From positions 186,001 through 250,000 of the forward strand of contig OW569389.1 of NCBI GenBank assembly GCA_937625935.1: 64,000 nt of DNA, read 5' to 3'. Shown in pieces: positions 21,090-31,431 of the stretch; within the stretch, counting starts at the first letter, position 1; every line of letters starts with the position of its first letter. The notes beneath the pieces were generated by a model. It had not been told where the DNA came from. It was given only the letters and a program-made list of their open reading frames with translations, and made no database searches. The stretch is from Tetramitus jugosus. Taxonomy: Eukaryota; Protista; Heterolobosea. Both the position numbers and the translations under genes were made by a program.

Positions 21090-24000
21090 ATGTTGAGTCG
21101 AGATGATGACGCACGCGACTCATTGAGTAGTAGTCGAGGCAGTGTTGTTGGAATCACCAAGATAATTTTGATGAACAATAGGAGACGAAGAAGAAAGGAA
21201 GGAGTAACACCAACAACAGCTACATCTAGGTCATCATCCTCTCTTCAACTACGCCAGGAAGAAGAAGCAGAAGAAGACCTGAGTGCCATGACAACAAGTT
21301 CACAACAACAACAAGAGTATGGATTTAAGTTCAATCCAGTACACAACAGTAACGATAATAATGATCGAATCATCGGAAGAGAACAACAACCACAGCAACT
21401 ATTGAAGAACAAGCATACGACTGTTCACCATCATTATCATCATATGGGTGATTCAAGTGAGGAAGAAGACAACACACCGATTCGTATGCCAGAACAATAC
21501 GAAATCTCTCCTCACGTCTCACACATCAAAGCCATGGTCAAAGTACTAAAGAGTATCACTGATGCACCATTGAATAATCACACCACTCCTAATTCGACTC
21601 TTAACAACAGTACAATGACTCTAGCAACAGGAGGAGCAGATATCCATTCTATTCACACGAGTACAACAATGGACAGCAGTCATCATCTTCCAATGAACAA
21701 TGCGACAACAACAACCACAATGAATGGCTCATCTGACCTGTTGACAGGTAGACCTACAATGAATCAATTGATTCTATCCATGTCTTATCTGAGAGACCTC
21801 GATTTAACAGATGTGAGTAATCAGTATGCCATTGTTGAATCTCATGGCATCGTACCACTTCTCAAACTCTTCTCCTTTAAGCAGAATGACGAGATTCGAA
21901 TAGGAGCTGCCTCTATTCTCAGTATTCTGTCCAAGAATAGTCGCATTCAATTGAAAATTGCAGATGAGACAGGAGTGTTGTTACTACTAAAGGTATTGAG
22001 CGAGAATGATAGTGCTCGATCATTGACTGACTCTGAGTATCCACATACGGACTCTTCTTTGCCGTCATCCAGTAGAAGACACAGAGTCCAACCATCCTCA
22101 AACTTGCCCAGTGCTCGAAATCAAAACTCAAACGCGAACACTAATACTGGCATAAGACAGCACGGGCTAATGACATGCAACAATGGAAAAACAAAATCAT
22201 CTGAAGACTTCATTGTATTCCAGTGCTTAGTGTGTGAAATACTGGCCAACTGCTGTGAGAGAGTCATTGTTCGAAGAATTTTTCGAAACAATCAAGGTCT
22301 TATGATCATACTGTCCTTCCTGAGACAACATGGGCATTTCTTTTCTCGCATTGACGGTCACCATCATCAATCTGAAGCCAGTAGAGCTAGAAGCATCAAA
22401 CTGAAGAACCTGAGTACATTTCTCAAGAGAAATCACCCCTCGTATTCTCAACCAATATCTTCTTTCAAGAGAAAGAAACTGAACGAACAACTACTGATTA
22501 TTCATAGTTCTATTCGAGTCTTGTGGAGCGCACTCAAGAGTAAGAAGAATCAGGAGATACTGAGAAGACAAGAAGGGATCAAGATATTGTCCTTTTTCTT
22601 GGAGAGCATTATGCAGTACTACATGTTCTACCTGTCACAACAATCTCTCAACAATCTCGCTTTTGAAACGGGCGCTGAGGGTCCGTTGAAGTTGGAATCT
22701 CCGATCAAAAGCTTAGTCCCTCTCATCGGATGTTTCATGAGGTGTGCTGAGAATACTAGAGCGAGAAGAGAGATGGAAGATAGTGGAGTTGTTGACAAAC
22801 TATTCAAAGTCGCTCAAACACTGAACAAGAACGTCGAATATGGACAGGAGTTGGATTTACAGATTGTTGTTGCAGGACTGATCAATGAACTATGCTCTGA
22901 TGATAGTGCGAGAAAGAAATTAAAATCTTATGGAATTACATCTATATTTGGACAATGGATCAGGCAATATGATGGAACAGAGAAGTTAACACCATCATCA
23001 AAGAAGAGAGTTGTGTATTTGCTTGAGTTGTTGACGGGAGCTTTGTGGAAGAGTACCCAATTGGAAGTTAATTCAGTGGATCTTATGAGATTGGACATGA
23101 TGATCATTCTCGTCAATCTTATCTCACAGAACAACCCACTGTTCGAGAATTCTTTGCAACAATCACTTGGCAACTGTGAGAACATTGTGAAGATATCGTG
23201 TACAGGAATCATGTCCAATTGCGCACGCTTACCTGAGTGTCGAGAAGAGATGCATAAGACAGGTGTTGTAACAATTTTGTGTCAGTTGTTTAGTATCTCG
23301 GCTTCTACTCCACTGTTAGTCAATTGCTTAGATACTTTGGGTTTCATTGCTGATTCATCTGATATTTTAGGAGTAGTGTTGGAGGAGAATGGTATGAGAG
23401 CAATTTGGACCATGTTGCGAAGTGATAATCCACCTGTTCAAGCTGCTGCAGCTAGGGCCATTTGTAATTGTGTTAATAATCCTGAAGTAGCTGCCAGGAT
23501 TGGAGAAATTTTTGTTAGTGGAATGGCAGCTCTCGTGAGAACGCTTGAACAGAGTAATGATCATCAAGTGGTTGGATACTGCTGCCAAGCGATTGCTAAA
23601 ATGAGCTTGTATGAGACAAATCGAGCAGTGTTAACTGAAGAAGGAGCACTGTTGCAACTGTCTCGTGTGTTACAAGCCACTCGAATTCAATTCGATGAAG
23701 TAATTAACTTCATGGGTCAATCCTTGTACTGTAAGACACAAAAAAGTCACAACAATCATGGTGTATCTGGAAGCAACACTCCAGTGTTGACCTATTCTAT
23801 CGATAAGATTGATAGTTTGAATTTGAACAGTCCCGTTCTGAATAAGAGACTATTGGATATCTTGTTTGTGAAATCTCATGCATCAACGGCAATAGGAGAA
23901 CTTGCCAAGAGAAAGGGAAACAAGACTAAGTTGTATGAGTATGGAGCCGTGGAACCACTAGTAGAAAACTTGATGCTCCATCCATTTTTGCAAGCTCACT

Positions 24001-24515
24001 TTATGGCCAATAATGATCAAACTGTGGACAACTTCACCATGATTGAGATTGTTGGCAAACACAATTCAAAAACCAACTCCTACAACCAATCTGAGGTTGT
24101 CACTAATCCTCCATTGTCATGTACACCTCCCTTCACTTGTAACAGTACTGTTTGTGCAAAGAATTCATTGAAAATGGCTTCTTTGATGGTCCCTGATCTC
24201 GACTGCTACTATTGTCATCTATTCAGAAACAGTTCTTATGCTCTCAGCATTCTCTCCGAAGAAAAAATAATTGCAATCGCATTGAGGATGTGTAACTGTG
24301 TTTCATTATTAACGAAACTATTGAGCTCCAGGAATGATGACCTCCAAATTGCAGCTGCCACTTGCGCCAGCAATATTCGAAAGTATCATGTGAGTGCGAC
24401 GAAGGTAGCGGGAAACACAACATTGTTGGCTCCACCGACAATAAGACCGTCGTTGAAAAGTAGAGCCTCTGTAGTGTCGTCCTACAGTATGAGAAACGAA
24501 GATTTAGACTTATGA
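21090..24515 (+). CDS. ODAD2: Armadillo-repeat outer dynein arm docking complex subunit 2 (ARMC4-like)
   Basis: ARM repeats with ARMC4-like segments LRDLDLTDVSNQYAI, GMRAIWTMLRSDNPPVQAAAARAICNCVNN...FVSGM, NRAVLTEEG and terminal LQIAAATCASNIRK; exact start uncertain. Confidence 0.75.
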   Translation: MLSRDDDARDSLSSSRGSVVGITKIILMNNRRRRRKEGVTPTTATSRSSSSLQLRQEEEAEEDLSAMTTSSQQQQEYGFKFNPVHNSNDNNDRIIGREQQPQQLLKNKHTTVHHHYHHMGDSSEEEDNTPIRMPEQYEISPHVSHIKAMVKVLKSITDAPLNNHTTPNSTLNNSTMTLATGGADIHSIHTSTTMDSSHHLPMNNATTTTTMNGSSDLLTGRPTMNQLILSMSYLRDLDLTDVSNQYAIVESHGIVPLLKLFSFKQNDEIRIGAASILSILSKNSRIQLKIADETGVLLLLKVLSENDSARSLTDSEYPHTDSSLPSSSRRHRVQPSSNLPSARNQNSNANTNTGIRQHGLMTCNNGKTKSSEDFIVFQCLVCEILANCCERVIVRRIFRNNQGLMIILSFLRQHGHFFSRIDGHHHQSEASRARSIKLKNLSTFLKRNHPSYSQPISSFKRKKLNEQLLIIHSSIRVLWSALKSKKNQEILRRQEGIKILSFFLESIMQYYMFYLSQQSLNNLAFETGAEGPLKLESPIKSLVPLIGCFMRCAENTRARREMEDSGVVDKLFKVAQTLNKNVEYGQELDLQIVVAGLINELCSDDSARKKLKSYGITSIFGQWIRQYDGTEKLTPSSKKRVVYLLELLTGALWKSTQLEVNSVDLMRLDMMIILVNLISQNNPLFENSLQQSLGNCENIVKISCTGIMSNCARLPECREEMHKTGVVTILCQLFSISASTPLLVNCLDTLGFIADSSDILGVVLEENGMRAIWTMLRSDNPPVQAAAARAICNCVNNPEVAARIGEIFVSGMAALVRTLEQSNDHQVVGYCCQAIAKMSLYETNRAVLTEEGALLQLSRVLQATRIQFDEVINFMGQSLYCKTQKSHNNHGVSGSNTPVLTYSIDKIDSLNLNSPVLNKRLLDILFVKSHASTAIGELAKRKGNKTKLYEYGAVEPLVENLMLHPFLQAHFMANNDQTVDNFTMIEIVGKHNSKTNSYNQSEVVTNPPLSCTPPFTCNSTVCAKNSLKMASLMVPDLDCYYCHLFRNSSYALSILSEEKIIAIALRMCNCVSLLTKLLSSRNDDLQIAAATCASNIRKYHVSATKVAGNTTLLAPPTIRPSLKSRASVVSSYSMRNEDLDL

Positions 24516-24602
24516 TTCAGATTTCCTAATGCCCTGTCAAACATATCAAAGAGGGAACTTAGAATCCTCTAAGCATTAAAGTTCCTAACTATTGTTTGAT
24601 AA

Positions 24603-27225
24603 TTACTTCATTGCAGCTCTCATTCTCATTGCCATTTTTTGATAGTACAGCGCTTTGGATAAGTAATCCTCTTTTCTGTAGTCCACACCCTTAGAAAGAA
24701 TTTTCCTGGATCGTGTCACTTGTACATCGTCACGCGCCAAGTGTTGCCCATGTAGTTTACTCATTGTTAGGTATGTATTTCCTAGGTTTGTGAGAGCTTG
24801 ACTCTGAACTTGTATTTGATTATACTTTCGTCCAAGGTCCAGGTACTTTTCAAAGTATTCGATTGCTTTTTCGAATTCACTTCTCTTGAAGTAGATGTTT
24901 GCAATTTTGAATGCAATTCCTAGTTGATGTACTCCGATGTTATCTAATCTTCTTGTTACTATTCTGTCCAGAGGACTTGATCCCACATTCTCCTCGGCAA
25001 TCATATCCAAACTCTCATTTAAGGCAGTGCAAAGCACTTCCAAAGCCTTGTCATACATAAAGTTAGCCTCGTAAGAAGAACCAATGATTGCATAAACTTC
25101 CAACAAGTCTTCGTTGTCTTGTTGTGTTCTATTCTTCATCATGAATATCAATCTTCCCTTGGTCTCCCATGTCTCAATTGCTTGTTCGACCATATTGATC
25201 GATTCATAGAGTGTTGCAAGGTTAGTCAACGCTATTAAATGAGAATCCATGTAGCAATTATCCAATGTAAACTTCACAGTTCGTTTGTACAAAACAATAG
25301 CCTGGGGATCTCTGCCCGTCAAGTGATAAATACTTGCCAACAGAGAATAGAGTTCCGCATATACTATCCTCGGTTTTGTTTGTTGTTCCTTCGGATTACC
25401 TGTTCGATGTGAGTCCAAGTACCTCAAAGTCTCTTTGGCAACCTGCTCGGCCTCTGAATAATTCTCTTGCAAAATGAGCTGTCTAACCTTCTCAACTTCC
25501 GAAAACAACAATGTATGTAACTGTTGTTCGGCTGGAGTGACCTCCTTGTGAATGATATCAAATACTTTGAGAGAGGTTGACTGTAGTGATCTATCGTCCA
25601 TTAAGTCGATTGGTATTGTCATCTTCTCTGTAGATAATAAATTTCTGGGAGTTTGAATTGCGTCAGGAGGTTCAATCCGTTTGTTTGTAATTGTGTCTCT
25701 CTGGAGCAATTTCTCTCTCATTTCCTTGACATCAGGTCGAGAATTTGATCGATAAAGCGGAGCAGAACGTGATAAACCTCTAAGAGATTCCATTAATTCT
25801 TCTTGCTCACGATAAATATGTTGAATAATTGGATCGTCATTTAGAAACCTATCATCTAAAGGATAAATCTCGGATGGTTGCTGTTCACATTCCGTCATTG
25901 GATAGTGCAATTCCTCATTCTCATTATGAAATGCAGAATCATGAACTGTTGCTTCACTGTATCTGCCCCGAAGTGTCGTTGATGAGGCACTCTTCTTGAG
26001 CTTGCGAGTATTGGGAGCAGTCTCTTTTCTCTTTAGTATGTCAGAAGTGGCTCGAGGAATAGTGCTCTTTGATCGCACCCAATATGCCGATGCAGGCCTA
26101 CTAAGTGCTATTGTTCGGGCAGAAGCAGTCCTAGGACGACTCGTTGGTTTACGAGATGTAATTTCCGGTTGAGCTAGTGCATTGGCGTGCTTCCAAAACT
26201 GTTTTCTTTTGTCAAGATAGCTGAGGGTGGATGACACTAGGTCATAAATCTTGCTATCTTTGGATGAACCATCTATATCCCGCTGAAAGGTTTTGTCTTT
26301 CAACAAATTTTGAAGATACTTCTCGTCCTCGGTGAACTCACCTAACAACTTCCTCCGACTCAACTTCTTTTTATCAATACTATCGATCGTTTGTGGTTCA
26401 CCCATTTTGCCTGGATAATCTTCAGTCATATGAGGTGGCAGAGGAGATTTCATATCCTTCTCTGGTAATTTCAACATTTCTGCCATCTTCTGATCCACTG
26501 GTTTCGGAAACGATTGTTCGTATGATTTTAAAGCAAAGGTCGCTTCAGCTCTCGAAGGGATGTGGGCCATGCTGCTGCTTCTCGAAGGGACAAACTCCGA
26601 TGCATTACTAGTTGCTCCTGGACGAATTCCATAAGTCTCCATCAGATTTACACGTTGTCTTACGACATTCCCTAGTGCTCCATTATTGCATACCAGTTCT
26701 GCATCGAGTGCGTCTTGCTCAATGGATTCATTGATTGCAATTTTTGCTTTCCGTATTCCCCTCCTAAAATCCTGAATATCCTTTCGAAGTAAGAAACCCT
26801 TGTAATAGTAAACTAGTGCAAATTCAAATTTTCCACATGCATAGAGCGCCTCTGCTTTCTGAAGAAATCCCTTGTAGTACTTTGTGTCCAATGATAGCGC
26901 CCTGTCAGCATCATCAATCGCCTCATCAAATCTACCTAGATTCATGTAGCACTTTGATCGACTCACCAATGCGTTCTTATTCTGTGGATTTAATTCTAGA
27001 GCCTACAATCCAATAGAAAAAACTTGAGTATTCTCTTGGTCCCTTTCACACACATTTTGACTTTCTACTTACTCTTGTGTAGGCATTCTCCGCCTTCTCC
27101 CAGTTATGAAGTTTCATATTGATGTCTCCCTCTGCCACTGCACTCGATATCTTGGAGAACTTTGGGATATCTTCCTTTAACTCCTTTGCAGATCCAGTAT
27201 AACTCCTATACGTATCATCATTCAT
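24603..27225 (-). CDS. ODAD4: TPR outer dynein arm docking complex subunit 4 (TTC25-like), 2 exons: 27225-27073, 27002-24603
   Basis: AEGD...DKNALVSRSKCYMNLG...KGFLQKAEALYACGKFEFALVYYYKGFLLR...GIRKAKIAINESI, LLGEFTEDEKYLQNLL and YLDKRKQFW are TTC25 hallmarks; intron 27003-27072 GTAAGT...TAG, phase 0. Confidence 0.85.
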
Positions 27226-27449
27226 ATTACTATTTTCAATCGTGTTTTCATTAACAAGCTGAACTGCGAGAACCAATAATCGCTGTTGTTCAAAGAGTTC
27301 TTTAACGACAATCTTTTCTTTTCCCGCCACACATATCATCCAATCAATCGTTTAGAACCTTCGTGAATGAGAAATCCGTAACAGCGGCGTTAATTCATAA
27401 TTCTCCTCTCCGCCCAAAACAAAACAATTCAAAATTCAACAACAACATC

Positions 27450-28748: not shown

Positions 28749-31431
28749 TTAATAGAAGAGAGTGACCAAGTTGGGATTATTGTTCATGATCTCTTCCCTT
28801 GTGACAATATTTCGGTCAAGGTTGCGCGTAATCCGAATATCCAGATGCTTGAGTGTCGGTATCCGTATCGTTGGTCTCTCCATGAACACGCAACAATCGA
28901 GATAGAGTTCTTCCAAGTGTTGATACGAGACAAAATCAGCACCTTCCTGTTCCTCTGCTGCCTCTTCCACAACAATTGTGGTTGTTGTTGCCACATCTTG
29001 CGATGAAACATTACTCGTCTCTTGCTTGTTCGTCATACTTGTCAATGACGCACCACTCTCATCCACACTATTCTTGTTGTTCATACTTGTGTTCACTTGA
29101 TCAATACTACTACTACTACTACTTGTGATAAAAGTCTCTGTTGTCTCTGTTTCTCTCACCTGGTGCGATAATGATGATGATGATGATGATGAATTCCGTT
29201 CTGTTTGTCGACAAATAAACTGCGGATTTCTCAATTGTGAACAACTACTGAGTGACAATAATCTCAAATGATTGGACACTCTGCGTTGTGTAATATTGGA
29301 TTCAATGACTTGATCCGTGACTGCCGTATACGCCAAATCCAGTGTCTCCAAATTGGGACAATGCAACTCTGGTGCCGTCAAATTTCTACTATATCTAAAA
29401 TTGAGATGTTCGAGGCATTGGAGACGAATACATGGTGAAATCAAGTGCCTGCACTCTTTGAGCAATAGTACTCTGAGATGAGACAATCGATGGAGCAGTG
29501 ACTGTAGTCCATCATCCGTAATACCCGTTCCAGTCAAATCCATTTCTATTAAATTTTCACTTTCGAATGATAGTGGTGATAGTGGTGATAGTGGAGAGAG
29601 TGGTGATGGTGGTGAATGCATATTGTTGTTGTTGTTACTGTTGTTGCTTAATGAACTGAAACTTCGAGTAAACGTAATACTGGTCATGAGTTCACAATAT
29701 GATAGATTAATACATCTCATATATCCACTATTATTATTATTATTATGATTGTGATTATTATGATTATTATTATTATGATTGTGATTGTGAGCATCTTCAG
29801 TCATCATCATCATTAATTGATAATTTTTACTATTGCGACTATTCTGATTTTGATAGTAGTAGGATGAATGTGGAGAAGAGGGTGATGTGGAGAGAGCAGA
29901 GGATACAGGTGATGAAGTCGAAGAGGAAGAGTAGGATGCTGCTTGAGTACTACTACCATCAATATGATTGTTGTTGTTGTTGTTATTATTATTATTATTA
30001 TTGATGCTTGCACTTCGACTTCTTCTATTGTTATTGCTATTGTTATTGTTGTTGTGAATGAGACTGTTGCTTCTGCTCGTGTTGGACACACTGTGCTGCA
30101 ATGAGATTTTTGGGTGTTGGAGACCACAGCTCACCAACGTCAAATCTTCAATGACTTTACAATTTTCAAAAATGGTGTTCAACATGTCATCGTTCAACTC
30201 ATAGAACTGTTCCAATCTCAACACTGTAATTTGCTTGAAGCTGAAACAAATGGTATTGTGTTTGAATTAAATTCTTACTAGAATACAAAAAAAATAAATA
30301 CAAAAAAAGTAATTACCTCGTAATAAAGCTCAATGCCTCACTAATGACATCGATATTGATGGGAATGTTTCCAAAAAAGACATTCTTATTGACAGACACC
30401 ATCTTGACATTCTGAAACGACGAAAACACAATTTCTCTCCACCATTGACACACATTGGTCAACGCGGGGAAAATATCCGCAAATGTCAAGAACTGAAACA
30501 CTTTTCTGTGCAGGACATCCGACATTTGATAAATGGGATTTTTTTCATCGCGATTCAGATCAAAAAAGCGCGCCACTTCTGTGTCCTCATGGAACAATCC
30601 ATAATGTTCCGCTACTCCGTCTAGAAAGGCTTGAAGGCCCAGCAATCGTTTACTAATGTTGATTTCTTTCATGTTACCAAACATGATTTTGGGAGGTAGG
30701 GATGGCACACTGATCATGACTCGATTTCCACCACTACCATTACTATTATTATTATTATTACTATTATTATTATTATTAATACCACTCAGATTCAAATTAA
30801 AATCAAAATAATTGTTATTGGTAATGGATGCTCTAGGTGATAATATTGGTTGTTGTATTTGTTGTAATTGTTGTTGTTGTGTACTTGACAGACTCAAATG
30901 ACCACTGCTGTTATTACTACTACTACTACTACTACTGTTATTATTGTTAATAGTTGTGCATAGAGTGGTTAAATGCTTGTGCAAATCATGAAATTCACTG
31001 TATCTCTTGGCAACAATCCAACTTCGTTTCGTTGTCATTTGATTCTTACACACTCGAATAAAATAAACAGTGTATACTTGACCATCTGATGATGTACCAT
31101 TATTACTATTACCACTATTGTTATTATTTGTTGTATTGTTAGGATTGTTATTACTATTGCTTGTATTGTTAGTCGTATTATTATGATTGTCCTTGTCCTT
31201 GTTGTTGTTTCTCTTGAGATTGATCCCTGGTAAGAAATCTTGAATCAATTGATTGGTTGTTTTTTTTGCCTTGGTATCTGTGCTTTCAATCTTGAATTGA
31301 CAATTGAATCCAGAAAAAGAAGATGAGGGAACAAATGATGTGGCATTGTAGTGACTCAATGGTTGATTCACTAGCAATTGTCCGCTCTTGACTCGTTTAT
31401 GTCGACTGTTGACTGATTTTTTATGAAACAT
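28749..31431 (-). CDS. PX domain - F-box - LRR protein, 2 exons: 31431-30317, 30240-28749
   Basis: PX: YTVYFIRV...WIVAKRYSEFHDLHKHL...PSLPPK...KRLLGLQAFL; F-box: IYQMSDVLHRKVFQFL...TNVCQWWREI; Cys-containing LRRs; intron 30241-30316 GTAATT...CAG, phase 2. Confidence 0.8.

What the first reader, a model, noticed from the sequence alone, without database searches (positions are those of the whole stretch)
21090..27225. ODAD2 (ARMC4) and ODAD4 (TTC25) orthologues are direct neighbours: a linked, animal-type dynein docking module in a protist
Seen: an ARM-repeat gene and a TPR gene converge with only 87 bp between their stops (24515/24603). Known: ARMC4 and TTC25 are subunits of the pentameric outer dynein arm docking complex of animal cilia (with CCDC114, CCDC151, calaxin), whereas Chlamydomonas uses a trimeric DC1-3 complex; the human genes are unlinked. 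Inference: this lineage has the pentameric-type complex, implying deep ancestry. Adjacency of two partners of one complex is unlikely by chance and may reflect co-regulation during flagellate differentiation, possibly with overlapping 3' UTRs.
Basis: partly seen in the sequence, partly recalled or inferred. Interest (0 to 1): 0.8.

Follow-up and report, generated by a model that had tools for sequence, protein, structure and literature searches.

The report
Neighbouring ODAD2 and ODAD4 docking genes
Two adjacent genes in this heterolobosean-type protist encode relatives of the armadillo-repeat and TPR-repeat partners that help anchor outer dynein motors in animal cilia. The identification holds and at least the armadillo partner is old, but their tail-to-tail position looks like a local rearrangement rather than a designed module.

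Summary
An intact 1141-aa ARM-repeat gene (+, 21090-24515) and a two-exon TPR gene (-, 27225-24603) converge with 87 bp between their stops.

- **TPR gene.** It is an ODAD4/TTC25 orthologue. The match to human ODAD4 is collinear and includes the non-TPR linker (E 2e-31). The only other similar TPR genes in the genome are HOP and a DnaJ-TPR protein.
- **ARM gene.** It is a very divergent ODAD2/ARMC4 orthologue. A naive reverse best hit fails, because a generic ARM gene on contig 20 scores higher. HMM register, a tree (sister to the jakobid Andalucia ODAD2, 94/98) and the predicted fold (top six PDB hits are all ODAD2) place it in the family.
- **Age.** ODAD2 orthologues also occur in ancyromonads, malawimonads, jakobids and barthelonids, so it is ancient. 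ODAD4's spread was not surveyed.
- **Rest of the complex.** The genome also has unlinked DC2/ODAD1 and DC1/ODAD3 genes. It carries two OAD-beta heavy-chain paralogues, the complement of three-headed arms. That does not fit the published link between the pentameric complex and two-headed arms.
- **Adjacency.** Two relatives keep the genes 3-4 kb apart, divergent, with a PX-F-box-LRR gene between them. Acrasis kona and more distant taxa show no linkage. An 87-bp convergent gap is ordinary in this genome.

No RNA data exist, so co-regulation is untested.

The parts
21090..24515 (+). ODAD2/ARMC4-like armadillo-repeat gene: one exon, 1141 aa. The N-terminal ~220 aa are low-complexity. The ARM solenoid runs from about aa 221 to 1110 with four disordered lineage-specific inserts.
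   Evidence: ORF. Best PDB sequence hit is ODAD2. The match to an opisthokont ODAD2 HMM is collinear. The tree places it in the ODAD2 family. The predicted fold gives ODAD2 chains as its top six PDB matches, TM 0.81-0.86 on the target for the top five and 0.79 for the sixth.
24516..24602 (.). 87-bp spacer between the two stop codons. It holds an ATTAAA on the + strand at 24575-24580.
   Evidence: Sequence read directly. The gap size is ordinary for convergent pairs in this window.
24603..27002 (-). ODAD4/TTC25-like gene, exon 2 (799 codons plus stop). It has N-terminal TPRs, a family-specific linker, a lineage-specific insert of about 225 aa, and C-terminal TPRs.
   Evidence: Translation. PDB best hits are ODAD4, at E 2.1e-31 for the single sequence and 2.7e-34 for a two-sequence profile. 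The six nearest Atlas clusters are all TTC25/ODAD4.
27003..27072 (-). 70-nt intron (GTAAGT...TAG), phase 0.
   Evidence: Sequence. L033 lacks this intron and reads through the same junction, and L001 has an intron at the same site.
27073..27225 (-). ODAD4-like gene, exon 1 (51 codons from the ATG at 27225). An in-frame upstream ATG lies at 27339.
   Evidence: Sequence. Conservation with L001 and L033 starts 12-13 codons after the ATG at 27225.

Best explanation
The two genes encode this organism's versions of ODAD2 (ARMC4) and ODAD4 (TTC25). [quoted passage not shown]

The organism is a heterolobosean-type discobid. It encodes a motile axoneme: 10 axonemal dynein heavy chains, DC1, DC2, CFAP91 and CCDC96/113. 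The likely role of the pair is to help dock outer arms on doublet microtubules when flagella are built. That role is inferred from orthology and was not shown here.

At least the ARM partner is ancestral to a wide span of eukaryotes and was lost or diverged beyond recognition in Chlamydomonas, ciliates and trypanosomatids.

The tail-to-tail adjacency is best read as a lineage-specific by-product of small inversions within an older four-gene neighbourhood (ARM, PX-F-box-LRR, TPR and a small gene). It is probably not a selected co-regulated module.
For: **ODAD4**
- phmmer against PDB gives human, bovine and porcine ODAD4 first (E 2e-31 to 2e-29). There are four collinear stretches, one of them the non-TPR linker.
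- A two-sequence profile gives 2.7e-34, against 5.5e-21 for the next hit, a designed TPR.
- The six nearest Atlas clusters are all TTC25/ODAD4.
- The only other similar loci in the genome are STI1/HOP and a DnaJ-TPR protein.

**ODAD2**
- A profile gives ODAD2 at 1.7e-29, against 8e-6 for the next ARM protein.
- An exhaustive search found only 186 hits. These include ODAD2 of fish, sponge, choanoflagellate, Fabomonas, Gefionella, Andalucia and Barthelona.
- An opisthokont ODAD2 HMM aligns in order. HMM positions 466-548, 643-968 and 974-1034 match aa 224-307, 540-961 and 1043-1103.
- In the ML tree the window clade (99.6/100) is sister to Andalucia plus P0140 (94.3/98). The generic ARM clade is separate at 100/100.
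- By Foldseek the top six PDB hits are all ODAD2 (E 1e-20 to 3e-10). The next hit, a designed ARM protein, is at 9e-10.

**Other subunits**
- DC2/ODAD1 lies on contig 29 and DC1/ODAD3 on contig 47.

**Lineage**
- The ARM clade includes Acrasis kona (accession prefix JAOPGA confirmed in PMC11589745).

**Synteny**
- L001 and L033 carry TPR(-), PX-LRR(-), a small gene(+), ARM(+).
- A. kona keeps PX-LRR next to ARM, with no TPR gene within 10 kb.
- L009, Barthelona and two ENA contigs show no TPR gene nearby.
- The gap size is ordinary.

**Biology of the pair**
- Gui et al. 2021 (PMC8595878) and PMC10139691.
Against: - **Reverse searches.** Oryzias ODAD2 and Fabomonas ODAD2 score higher on a different gene, G000:C20:449174-451082 (E 2e-27 and 1e-36). 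The window gene scores only 6e-14 and 9e-24.
- **Weak HMM score.** The window protein scores 141 bits against the ODAD2 HMM, where other protist orthologues score 384-855. It is a long branch, so a changed function cannot be excluded.
- **Possible biases.** The fold model used an alignment containing ODAD2 orthologues. The tree alignment was forced onto the ODAD2 HMM.
- **ODAD4 gaps.** No named ODAD4 sequence was available for a reverse search, and no ODAD4 phylogeny was made.
- **Adjacency may be more than chance.** Linkage within 4 kb persists in three genomes despite rearrangement. Several ODAD2 loci in other protists sit next to other ciliary genes. Some regional co-regulation is therefore not excluded.
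- **No expression or localisation data.**
Confidence: 0.7

Rival explanations
1. The adjacency is functional. Keeping the two binding partners tail to tail or close together gives coordinated expression during flagellum assembly, through a shared chromatin domain or overlapping 3' ends.
For: - The two products bind each other directly in mammals.
- Among the four docking genes located, the chance that two are direct neighbours is about 1e-3 with roughly 11,500 genes (my estimate).
- Linkage within 4 kb is kept in L001 and L033 despite inversions.
- A second adjacent axonemal pair exists on contig 7.
- ODAD2 orthologues elsewhere sit near CFAP91, a CH_2-domain gene, a CFA20-domain gene and CCDC39.
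- An ATTAAA lies 60 nt after the ARM stop, so the transcript could run into the TPR 3' end.
Against: - Orientation and order differ between relatives, so no shared 3' overlap or shared promoter is conserved.
- A. kona and more distant genomes lack the linkage.
- ODAD1 and ODAD3 are on other contigs, next to a Na/H exchanger and an RNase T gene.
- An 87-bp convergent gap is typical of this window.
- Across all protein complexes of a cell, one or two chance adjacencies are expected per compact genome. The pair was also picked after the fact.
- Unrelated genes such as Tra1 are syntenic too.
Confidence: 0.15
2. The window ARM gene is not the working ODAD2. The canonical ARM gene on contig 20 fills that role, and the window gene is a divergent paralogue with another function.
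For: - Raw reverse best hits from fish and Fabomonas ODAD2 go to contig 20.
- The 409-aa exon of the contig-20 gene hits bovine ODAD2 at 1e-59 in PDB.
- The window protein is a long branch with a weak HMM score.
Against: - Both contig-20 exons map to the same part of the ODAD2 HMM (positions 499-858). This is repeat slippage, not collinearity.
- Designed consensus ARM proteins score almost as well as ODAD2 (1e-45 to 1e-40).
- The contig-20 gene's orthologue P0264 and green-algal ARM proteins behave the same way, and green algae lack ODAD2.
- In the tree the contig-20 exons fall in a separate clade with 100/100 support.
- The window protein matches ODAD2 through to the C-terminal end, in sequence and in fold.
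Confidence: 0.1
3. The genes are relics without a present role, because the organism no longer builds outer arms or uses a DC1/DC2-only docking complex.
For: - A. kona, which has no described flagellate stage (my own knowledge), still carries an ARM homologue. It was called as fragments, and no TPR gene lies nearby.
- DC2 and DC1 here are most like the Chlamydomonas and Tetrahymena proteins, which work without ARMC4 and TTC25.
Against: - Both reading frames are long and intact. They are conserved with relatives at 50-58% identity over nearly the full length.
- The genome keeps 10 axonemal heavy chains including OAD-beta, plus DC1, DC2, CFAP91 and CCDC96/113.
Confidence: 0.05

Closest known systems
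Mammalian pentameric outer-dynein-arm docking complex (ODAD1-4 plus calaxin; PDB 7rro, 8j07)
   Same: Orthologues of ODAD2, ODAD4, ODAD1 and ODAD3 are encoded. The ARM domain model superposes on the solved ODAD2 chains (TM 0.81-0.86 on the target for the top five hits). ODAD4 shares the N-terminal TPR block, the linker and the C-terminal TPRs in the same order.
   Different: Sequences are very divergent, at roughly 17-18% identity for the ARM domain in the structural alignment. Both proteins carry large disordered inserts. Calaxin was not identified. The genome has two OAD-beta heavy chains rather than the single outer-arm beta chain per arm of two-headed animal dynein. In humans the two genes are on different chromosomes (my own knowledge).
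Chlamydomonas and Tetrahymena trimeric docking complex (DC1, DC2, DC3)
   Same: The DC2 and DC1 orthologues here are closest in sequence to the Chlamydomonas and Tetrahymena proteins (E 7e-76 and 1e-62). The heavy-chain complement, with two OAD-beta paralogues, resembles these three-headed species.
   Different: Those species are reported to lack ARMC4 and TTC25 orthologues (PMC8754002, PMC6952885). This genome has both.
Trypanosomatid docking complexes (PDB 9e78, 9e5c, 9y6s)
   Same: Same supergroup (Discoba). DC1 and DC2 homologues are shared.
   Different: T. brucei is reported to lack obvious ARMC4 and TTC25 orthologues and has a two-headed arm (PMC8595878). This discobid keeps both genes, as the jakobid Andalucia keeps ODAD2.
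Generic canonical ARM-repeat proteins (Vac8-like, beta-catenin-like; the contig-20 gene of this genome)
   Same: All are ARM solenoids. Raw similarity scores to the central ODAD2 repeats are high.
   Different: Their matches to ODAD2 are out of register and restricted to the central repeats. They form a separate clade. The window protein instead matches in order through to the C-terminus.

Membership tests
ODAD4 / TTC25 | N-terminal TPR block matching ODAD4 residues ~40-154 | tested here: met
   Stretch 1 covers query 2-119 against human 40-154, 80 bits, i-E 1e-21. A profile search gives 2.7e-34.
ODAD4 / TTC25 | Family-specific non-TPR linker following the first TPR block, in the same order | tested here: met
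   Stretch 2 covers query 190-275 against human 165-244, i-E 4.8e-4. It lies between the TPR blocks in the expected order.
ODAD4 / TTC25 | C-terminal TPR blocks collinear with ODAD4 | tested here: inconclusive
   Stretches 3 and 4 are in the right order but weak individually (i-E 0.97 and above 1).
ODAD4 / TTC25 | No better candidate in the same genome, and a reciprocal best hit | tested here: inconclusive
   The only other loci similar to it are STI1/HOP and a DnaJ-TPR protein. A true reverse search from a named ODAD4 could not be run because no reference id was available.
ODAD2 / ARMC4 | C-terminal ARM domain collinear with ODAD2 through to the C-terminus | tested here: met
   The opisthokont ODAD2 HMM matches in order over positions 466-1034. 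PDB stretches are collinear, including the last repeats.
ODAD2 / ARMC4 | Reciprocal best hit by raw score | tested here: not met
   Oryzias and Fabomonas ODAD2 hit the contig-20 ARM gene first. This is explained by consensus-like repeats matching out of register.
ODAD2 / ARMC4 | Phylogenetic placement inside the ODAD2 clade, apart from other ARM families | tested here: met
   The window clade is sister to Andalucia ODAD2 plus P0140 (94.3/98). The generic ARM clade is separate at 100/100. The position of the root within ODAD2 is unresolved.
ODAD2 / ARMC4 | Fold and repeat number of the ODAD2 ARM domain | tested here: met
   The top six Foldseek PDB hits are all ODAD2, with TM 0.81-0.86 on the target for the top five and 0.79 for the sixth, shorter chain. 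E runs from 1e-20 to 3e-10, against 9e-10 for the next hit. The alignment used for folding contained ODAD2 orthologues.
ODAD2 / ARMC4 | Pre-ARM N-terminal region | tested here: inconclusive
   The window protein scores 8.9 bits, which is not significant. Relative P0007 scores 44 bits over HMM positions 319-588.
Pentameric ODA docking complex | ODAD1 (CCDC114/DC2) and ODAD3 (CCDC151/DC1) present | tested here: met
   PF21773 matches lie on contigs 29 and 47. Their PDB best hits are Chlamydomonas DC2 at 7e-76 and Tetrahymena DC1 at 1e-62, with ODAD1 and ODAD3 also hit.
Pentameric ODA docking complex | Calaxin (CLXN) subunit | not tested
   No reference sequence or specific family model was at hand. 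The literature calls calaxin opisthokont-specific and reports an LC4 orthologue in Naegleria (PMC4415241).
Pentameric ODA docking complex | Association with two-headed outer arms, the correlation proposed by Gui et al. 2021 | tested here: not met
   There are two OAD-beta family heavy chains. L042 scores 1244 bits to DNAH17. L039 is 58% identical to DNAH9 and 52% to the Tetrahymena gamma chain, against 35-37% for OAD-alpha. Use of the two as alternative isoforms is not excluded.
Pentameric ODA docking complex | Location on the doublet at the base of the outer arm, and outer-arm loss on mutation | not testable with these tools
   Needs microscopy, proteomics or genetics.

The most novel reading that the evidence does not exclude
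Heteroloboseans have a mixed docking machinery. It would combine an ARMC4-TTC25 bridge of the 'animal' kind with Chlamydomonas/Tetrahymena-like DC1/DC2 and a three-headed outer arm built on two OAD-beta chains. If so, the ARMC4-TTC25 bridge belonged to the ancestral eukaryotic docking complex and was lost independently in green algae, ciliates and kinetoplastids. The proposed rule 'pentameric complex goes with two heads, trimeric with three' would then be wrong.
Probability: 0.4. Interest if true: 0.65.

Novelty: new member of a known kind. Interest (0 to 1): 0.4.

Why it matters
Reviews state that ODAD2 and ODAD4 have no orthologues in the classic protist models, and they treat the five-subunit complex as a vertebrate or animal feature.

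This work found clear ODAD2 orthologues in ancyromonads, malawimonads, jakobids and barthelonids. It also found an ODAD2/ODAD4 pair in a heterolobosean-type genome. Together these push at least the ARM partner far back in eukaryote history.

It also gives a free-living amoeboflagellate-type lineage in which the function of the pair could be studied outside animals. In that lineage the pair coexists with the gene complement of a three-headed arm, which allows a direct test of whether docking-complex type really tracks head number.

The adjacency itself is a minor curiosity.

Tried and rejected
- **Word-index searches.** These found only one close relative for each protein, both on one JGI contig. 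A housekeeping protein (crooked neck) gave no close named relative, so the organism could not be named that way.
- **Sequencing runs.** Only four runs hold the region. None is on record as RNA, and the intron is retained in their contigs. Expression, transcript ends and UTR overlap therefore could not be tested.
- **Metagenome scans.** A first call gave a machine error. Two scans for further relatives, with the TPR and ARM alignments, then found nothing.
- **Raw reverse best hit for ODAD2.** It pointed to the contig-20 ARM gene. I took this seriously and rejected it on HMM register, tree and fold.
- **Kelch-type N-terminal domain.** This is the mark of the third head in Chlamydomonas and Tetrahymena, from my own knowledge. 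I looked for it in the heavy-chain tails tested and found none. The head count therefore rests on paralogue number only.
- **SHIPPO-repeat family search.** It returned nothing anywhere.
- **Contig of P0131.** It was too short for synteny.
- **Upstream exon of the ARM gene.** None could be found.
- **Spliced models.** The TPR gene and the contig-20 gene were searched exon by exon. The joined proteins were not built or searched.


Full report
**The observation**

The + strand carries an uninterrupted 1141-codon ORF from the ATG at 21090 to the TGA at 24513-24515. The - strand carries an open frame ending in TAA at 24605-24603 and running up to 27002.

Reading the - strand upstream shows a phase-0 intron, GTAAGT...TAG, at 27072-27003. 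A 51-codon first exon starts at the ATG at 27225. The joined reading gives a regular TPR across the junction.

Relative L033 has no intron there and reads straight through the same junction. Relative L001 has an intron at the same site. The splice model is therefore supported without RNA.

Both genes are single copy in the 26.35-Mb, 56-contig assembly.

The spacing is not special. The nine convergent ORF pairs in this window have gaps of 38, 48, 54, 87, 98, 156, 222, 896 and 1215 bp.

**The TPR gene**

Exon 2 was searched by reference. The joined protein was not built.

- phmmer against all PDB chains puts human, bovine and porcine ODAD4 first, at E 2.1e-31 to 1.8e-29. The next hit is an engineered TPR at 1e-21.
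- The alignment to human ODAD4 has four stretches in the same order in both proteins. They are the N-terminal TPR block (80 bits), the non-TPR linker, and two C-terminal TPR blocks. An insert of about 225 residues sits between the linker and the C-terminal part.
- A profile built with the one close relative raises ODAD4 to 2.7e-34.
- The six nearest ESM-Atlas clusters are all named TTC25 or ODAD4.
- Within the genome, the only other loci resembling the protein are STI1/HOP and a DnaJ-TPR protein.

I could not run a reverse search from a named ODAD4, because no such sequence was returned by any tool.

**The ARM gene**

Forward evidence points to ODAD2:

- PDB best hits are human, porcine and bovine ODAD2, at 2.9e-23 to 4.8e-21. 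Their stretches are collinear and reach the last repeats.
- A two-sequence profile gives 1.7e-29 for ODAD2, against 8e-6 for the next ARM protein.
- An exhaustive HMMER search of 1.84 billion representatives returned only 186 hits.
- Look-ups named these hits as ODAD2 of fishes and a sponge, plus unnamed proteins of Salpingoeca, Fabomonas tropica (ancyromonad), Gefionella okellyi (malawimonad), Andalucia godoyi (jakobid) and Barthelona.

The reverse test failed at first. Oryzias ODAD2 and the Fabomonas protein score best on another gene, G000:C20:449174-451082 on the - strand. The window gene comes second or third.

That contig-20 gene has several short introns. Its exons were analysed separately. 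Its 409-aa exon hits bovine ODAD2 at 1e-59, but designed consensus ARM proteins follow closely at 1e-45 to 1e-40.

Four further tests separate the two genes:

1. **HMM register.** I built an HMM from seven opisthokont ODAD2 sequences. It aligns the protist orthologues end to end at 384-855 bits. It aligns the window protein in order at 141 bits. HMM positions 466-548, 643-968 and 974-1034 match residues 224-307, 540-961 and 1043-1103. Both contig-20 exons map onto the same central HMM region, 499-858. So do the contig-20 orthologue P0264 and two Pleodorina ARM proteins. That pattern is repeat slippage, not orthology.
2. **Tree.** An IQ-TREE analysis of the ARM domain puts the window protein and its close relatives in one clade (99.6/100). 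That clade is sister to Andalucia plus P0140 (94.3/98). The contig-20 exons fall in a separate clade of generic ARM proteins (100/100).
3. **Fold.** An AlphaFold2 model of residues 221-1141 has mean pLDDT 79 and pTM 0.77, with the solenoid mostly above 90. Four disordered inserts and a disordered C-terminal tail are evident. Its top six Foldseek PDB hits are all ODAD2 chains. E runs from 1e-20 to 3e-10, and TM on the target is 0.81-0.86 for the top five and 0.79 for the sixth, shorter chain. Designed ARM proteins (9e-10), beta-catenin, Vac8 and SPAG6 come after.
4. **No stronger candidate.** No other locus in the genome scores better than these two.

I conclude that the window gene is a fast-evolving ODAD2 orthologue. 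Two caveats apply. The tree alignment was made on the ODAD2 HMM, and the folding alignment contained ODAD2 orthologues.

**The organism**

One of the closest ARM relatives, P0129, lies on contigs with the accession prefix JAOPGA. That prefix belongs to the Acrasis kona genome, Heterolobosea, Discoba.

Together with the sister position to a jakobid, this places the window's organism among heterolobosean-type discobids. I could not name the genus, because a conserved splicing factor has no close named relative.

**The rest of the machinery**

- The Pfam ODAD1_CC model finds two genes, on contigs 29 and 47.
- Their best PDB hits are Chlamydomonas DC2 (7e-76) and Tetrahymena DC1 (1e-62). Mammalian ODAD1 and ODAD3 also hit.
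- Neither gene is linked to the window. Their neighbours are a Na/H exchanger and an RNase T gene.
- Twelve dynein heavy-chain genes are present.
- L042 on contig 21 is an OAD-beta chain. It scores 1244 bits to DNAH17 and 1102 to Chlamydomonas beta, against 650-690 for OAD-alpha chains.
- Its sister L039 on contig 26 is 55% identical to it, and the pairing has 100% support.
- Foldseek shows L039 is 58% identical to DNAH9 and 52% to the Tetrahymena gamma chain. Against OAD-alpha chains the figure is 35-37%, and against I1 chains 40-42%.

Two OAD-beta paralogues are what three-headed species have. Inaba (PMC4415241) reports that Naegleria outer arms look three-headed and that Naegleria has an LC4 orthologue.

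Gui et al. (PMC8595878) proposed that pentameric complexes go with two-headed arms. They noted T. brucei as an outlier that lacks ARMC4 and TTC25. This genome does not fit that rule. Use of the two beta chains as alternative isoforms is not excluded, though, and I found no Kelch-type N-terminal domain in the tails tested.

Calaxin, DC3 and LC4 were not classified.

**Is the adjacency meaningful?**

| Locus | Relation to the window | Arrangement |
|---|---|---|
| Window | this genome | ARM(+), TPR(-), unknown gene(+), PX-F-box-LRR(-), then Tra1 |
| L001 | JGI contig, 51-58% protein identity | ARM(-), small gene(-), PX-F-box-LRR(+), TPR(+), then genes collinear with the window up to Tra1 |
| L033 | more distant relative (Logan contig) | same arrangement as L001 |
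| L031 | Acrasis kona | PX-LRR next to ARM; no TPR gene within 10 kb either side |
| L009 | relative | ARM next to CFAP91; no TPR gene |
| L010-L012 | Barthelona and two ENA contigs | no TPR gene within the flanks |

In L001 and L033 the two docking genes are 3-4 kb apart and divergent. The looser arrangement is therefore the older one. The window's direct convergent adjacency arose through small inversions.

With about 11,500 genes, two of the four located docking genes being direct neighbours has a nominal chance near 1e-3. The pair was noticed after the fact, however. Over all known protein-protein pairs of a cell, one or two such coincidences are expected per compact genome.

I rate selection for the adjacency as possible but unsupported. 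A second adjacent axonemal pair, a dynein heavy chain and a CCDC96/113 gene on contig 7, is real. Several ODAD2 loci in other protists also have ciliary neighbours. A genome-wide clustering test would be worthwhile.

**Expression**

Only four runs hold the region. None is on record as RNA, and their contigs retain the intron. Co-expression and 3' overlap are untested.

**Comparison with the literature**

The nomenclature paper and several reviews state that ODAD2 and ODAD4 have no Chlamydomonas or Tetrahymena orthologues. No paper in the library mentions either gene together with Naegleria in a relevant way.

The finding is thus a new member of a known kind, with a modestly novel evolutionary implication.

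**Verdict**

Family calls and deep ancestry hold. 'Animal-type' and 'adjacency beyond chance' do not.
- Interest is 0.4.

Noticed in passing
G000:C20:449170-451800 (loci L021, L029): A multi-intron gene of near-consensus armadillo repeats with a coiled-coil N-terminus. It outscores the true ODAD2-like gene in reverse searches. It groups with green-algal 'Vac8'-annotated ARM proteins and the unnamed orthologue P0264. Its own function is unknown.
   Followed up: partly
G000:C21:243766-244752 (L042) and G000:C26:409351-410331 (L039): Two OAD-beta family dynein heavy-chain paralogues, 55% identical over 1000 aa. This is the gene complement of three-headed outer arms. The OAD-alpha chain was not identified among the other ten heavy chains.
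   Followed up: partly
G000:C7:147272-148255 and G000:C7:156301-156804: An inner-arm-type dynein heavy chain (3846-aa ORF) is followed closely by a CCDC96/CCDC113-family gene. This is a second adjacent axonemal pair in the genome.
   Followed up: partly
L009:6113-8323; L010:12936-14618; L011:13426-13830; L031:16179-18011: ODAD2 orthologues in four other protist contigs have another putatively ciliary gene as neighbour or near neighbour. These are CFAP91, a CH_2-domain gene, a CFA20-domain gene and a weak CCDC39 match. This may hint at general clustering of ciliary genes.
   Followed up: no
window 28749-31431 and L001, L031, L033: The PX-F-box-LRR gene is the most stable neighbour of the ARM gene across heterolobosean relatives. 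It is more stable than the TPR gene.
   Followed up: partly
L033:340-400: The ODAD4-like gene of relative L033 lacks the window's intron. It has an intron about 44 codons further on, which shows intron sliding or turnover between relatives.
   Followed up: partly
window 21500-27400: The DNA runs show many two-state single-base differences at about half depth across both genes. This is consistent with two haplotypes or strains in the sequenced material.
   Followed up: no
The 27363-28700 gene has no counterpart in L001, L031 or L033.
   Followed up: partly
L031 and L032 (Acrasis kona): The A. kona ARM homologue occurs on two contigs with near-identical structure and was called as fragments. A. 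kona has no described flagellate stage (my own knowledge), so its retention is curious.
   Followed up: no
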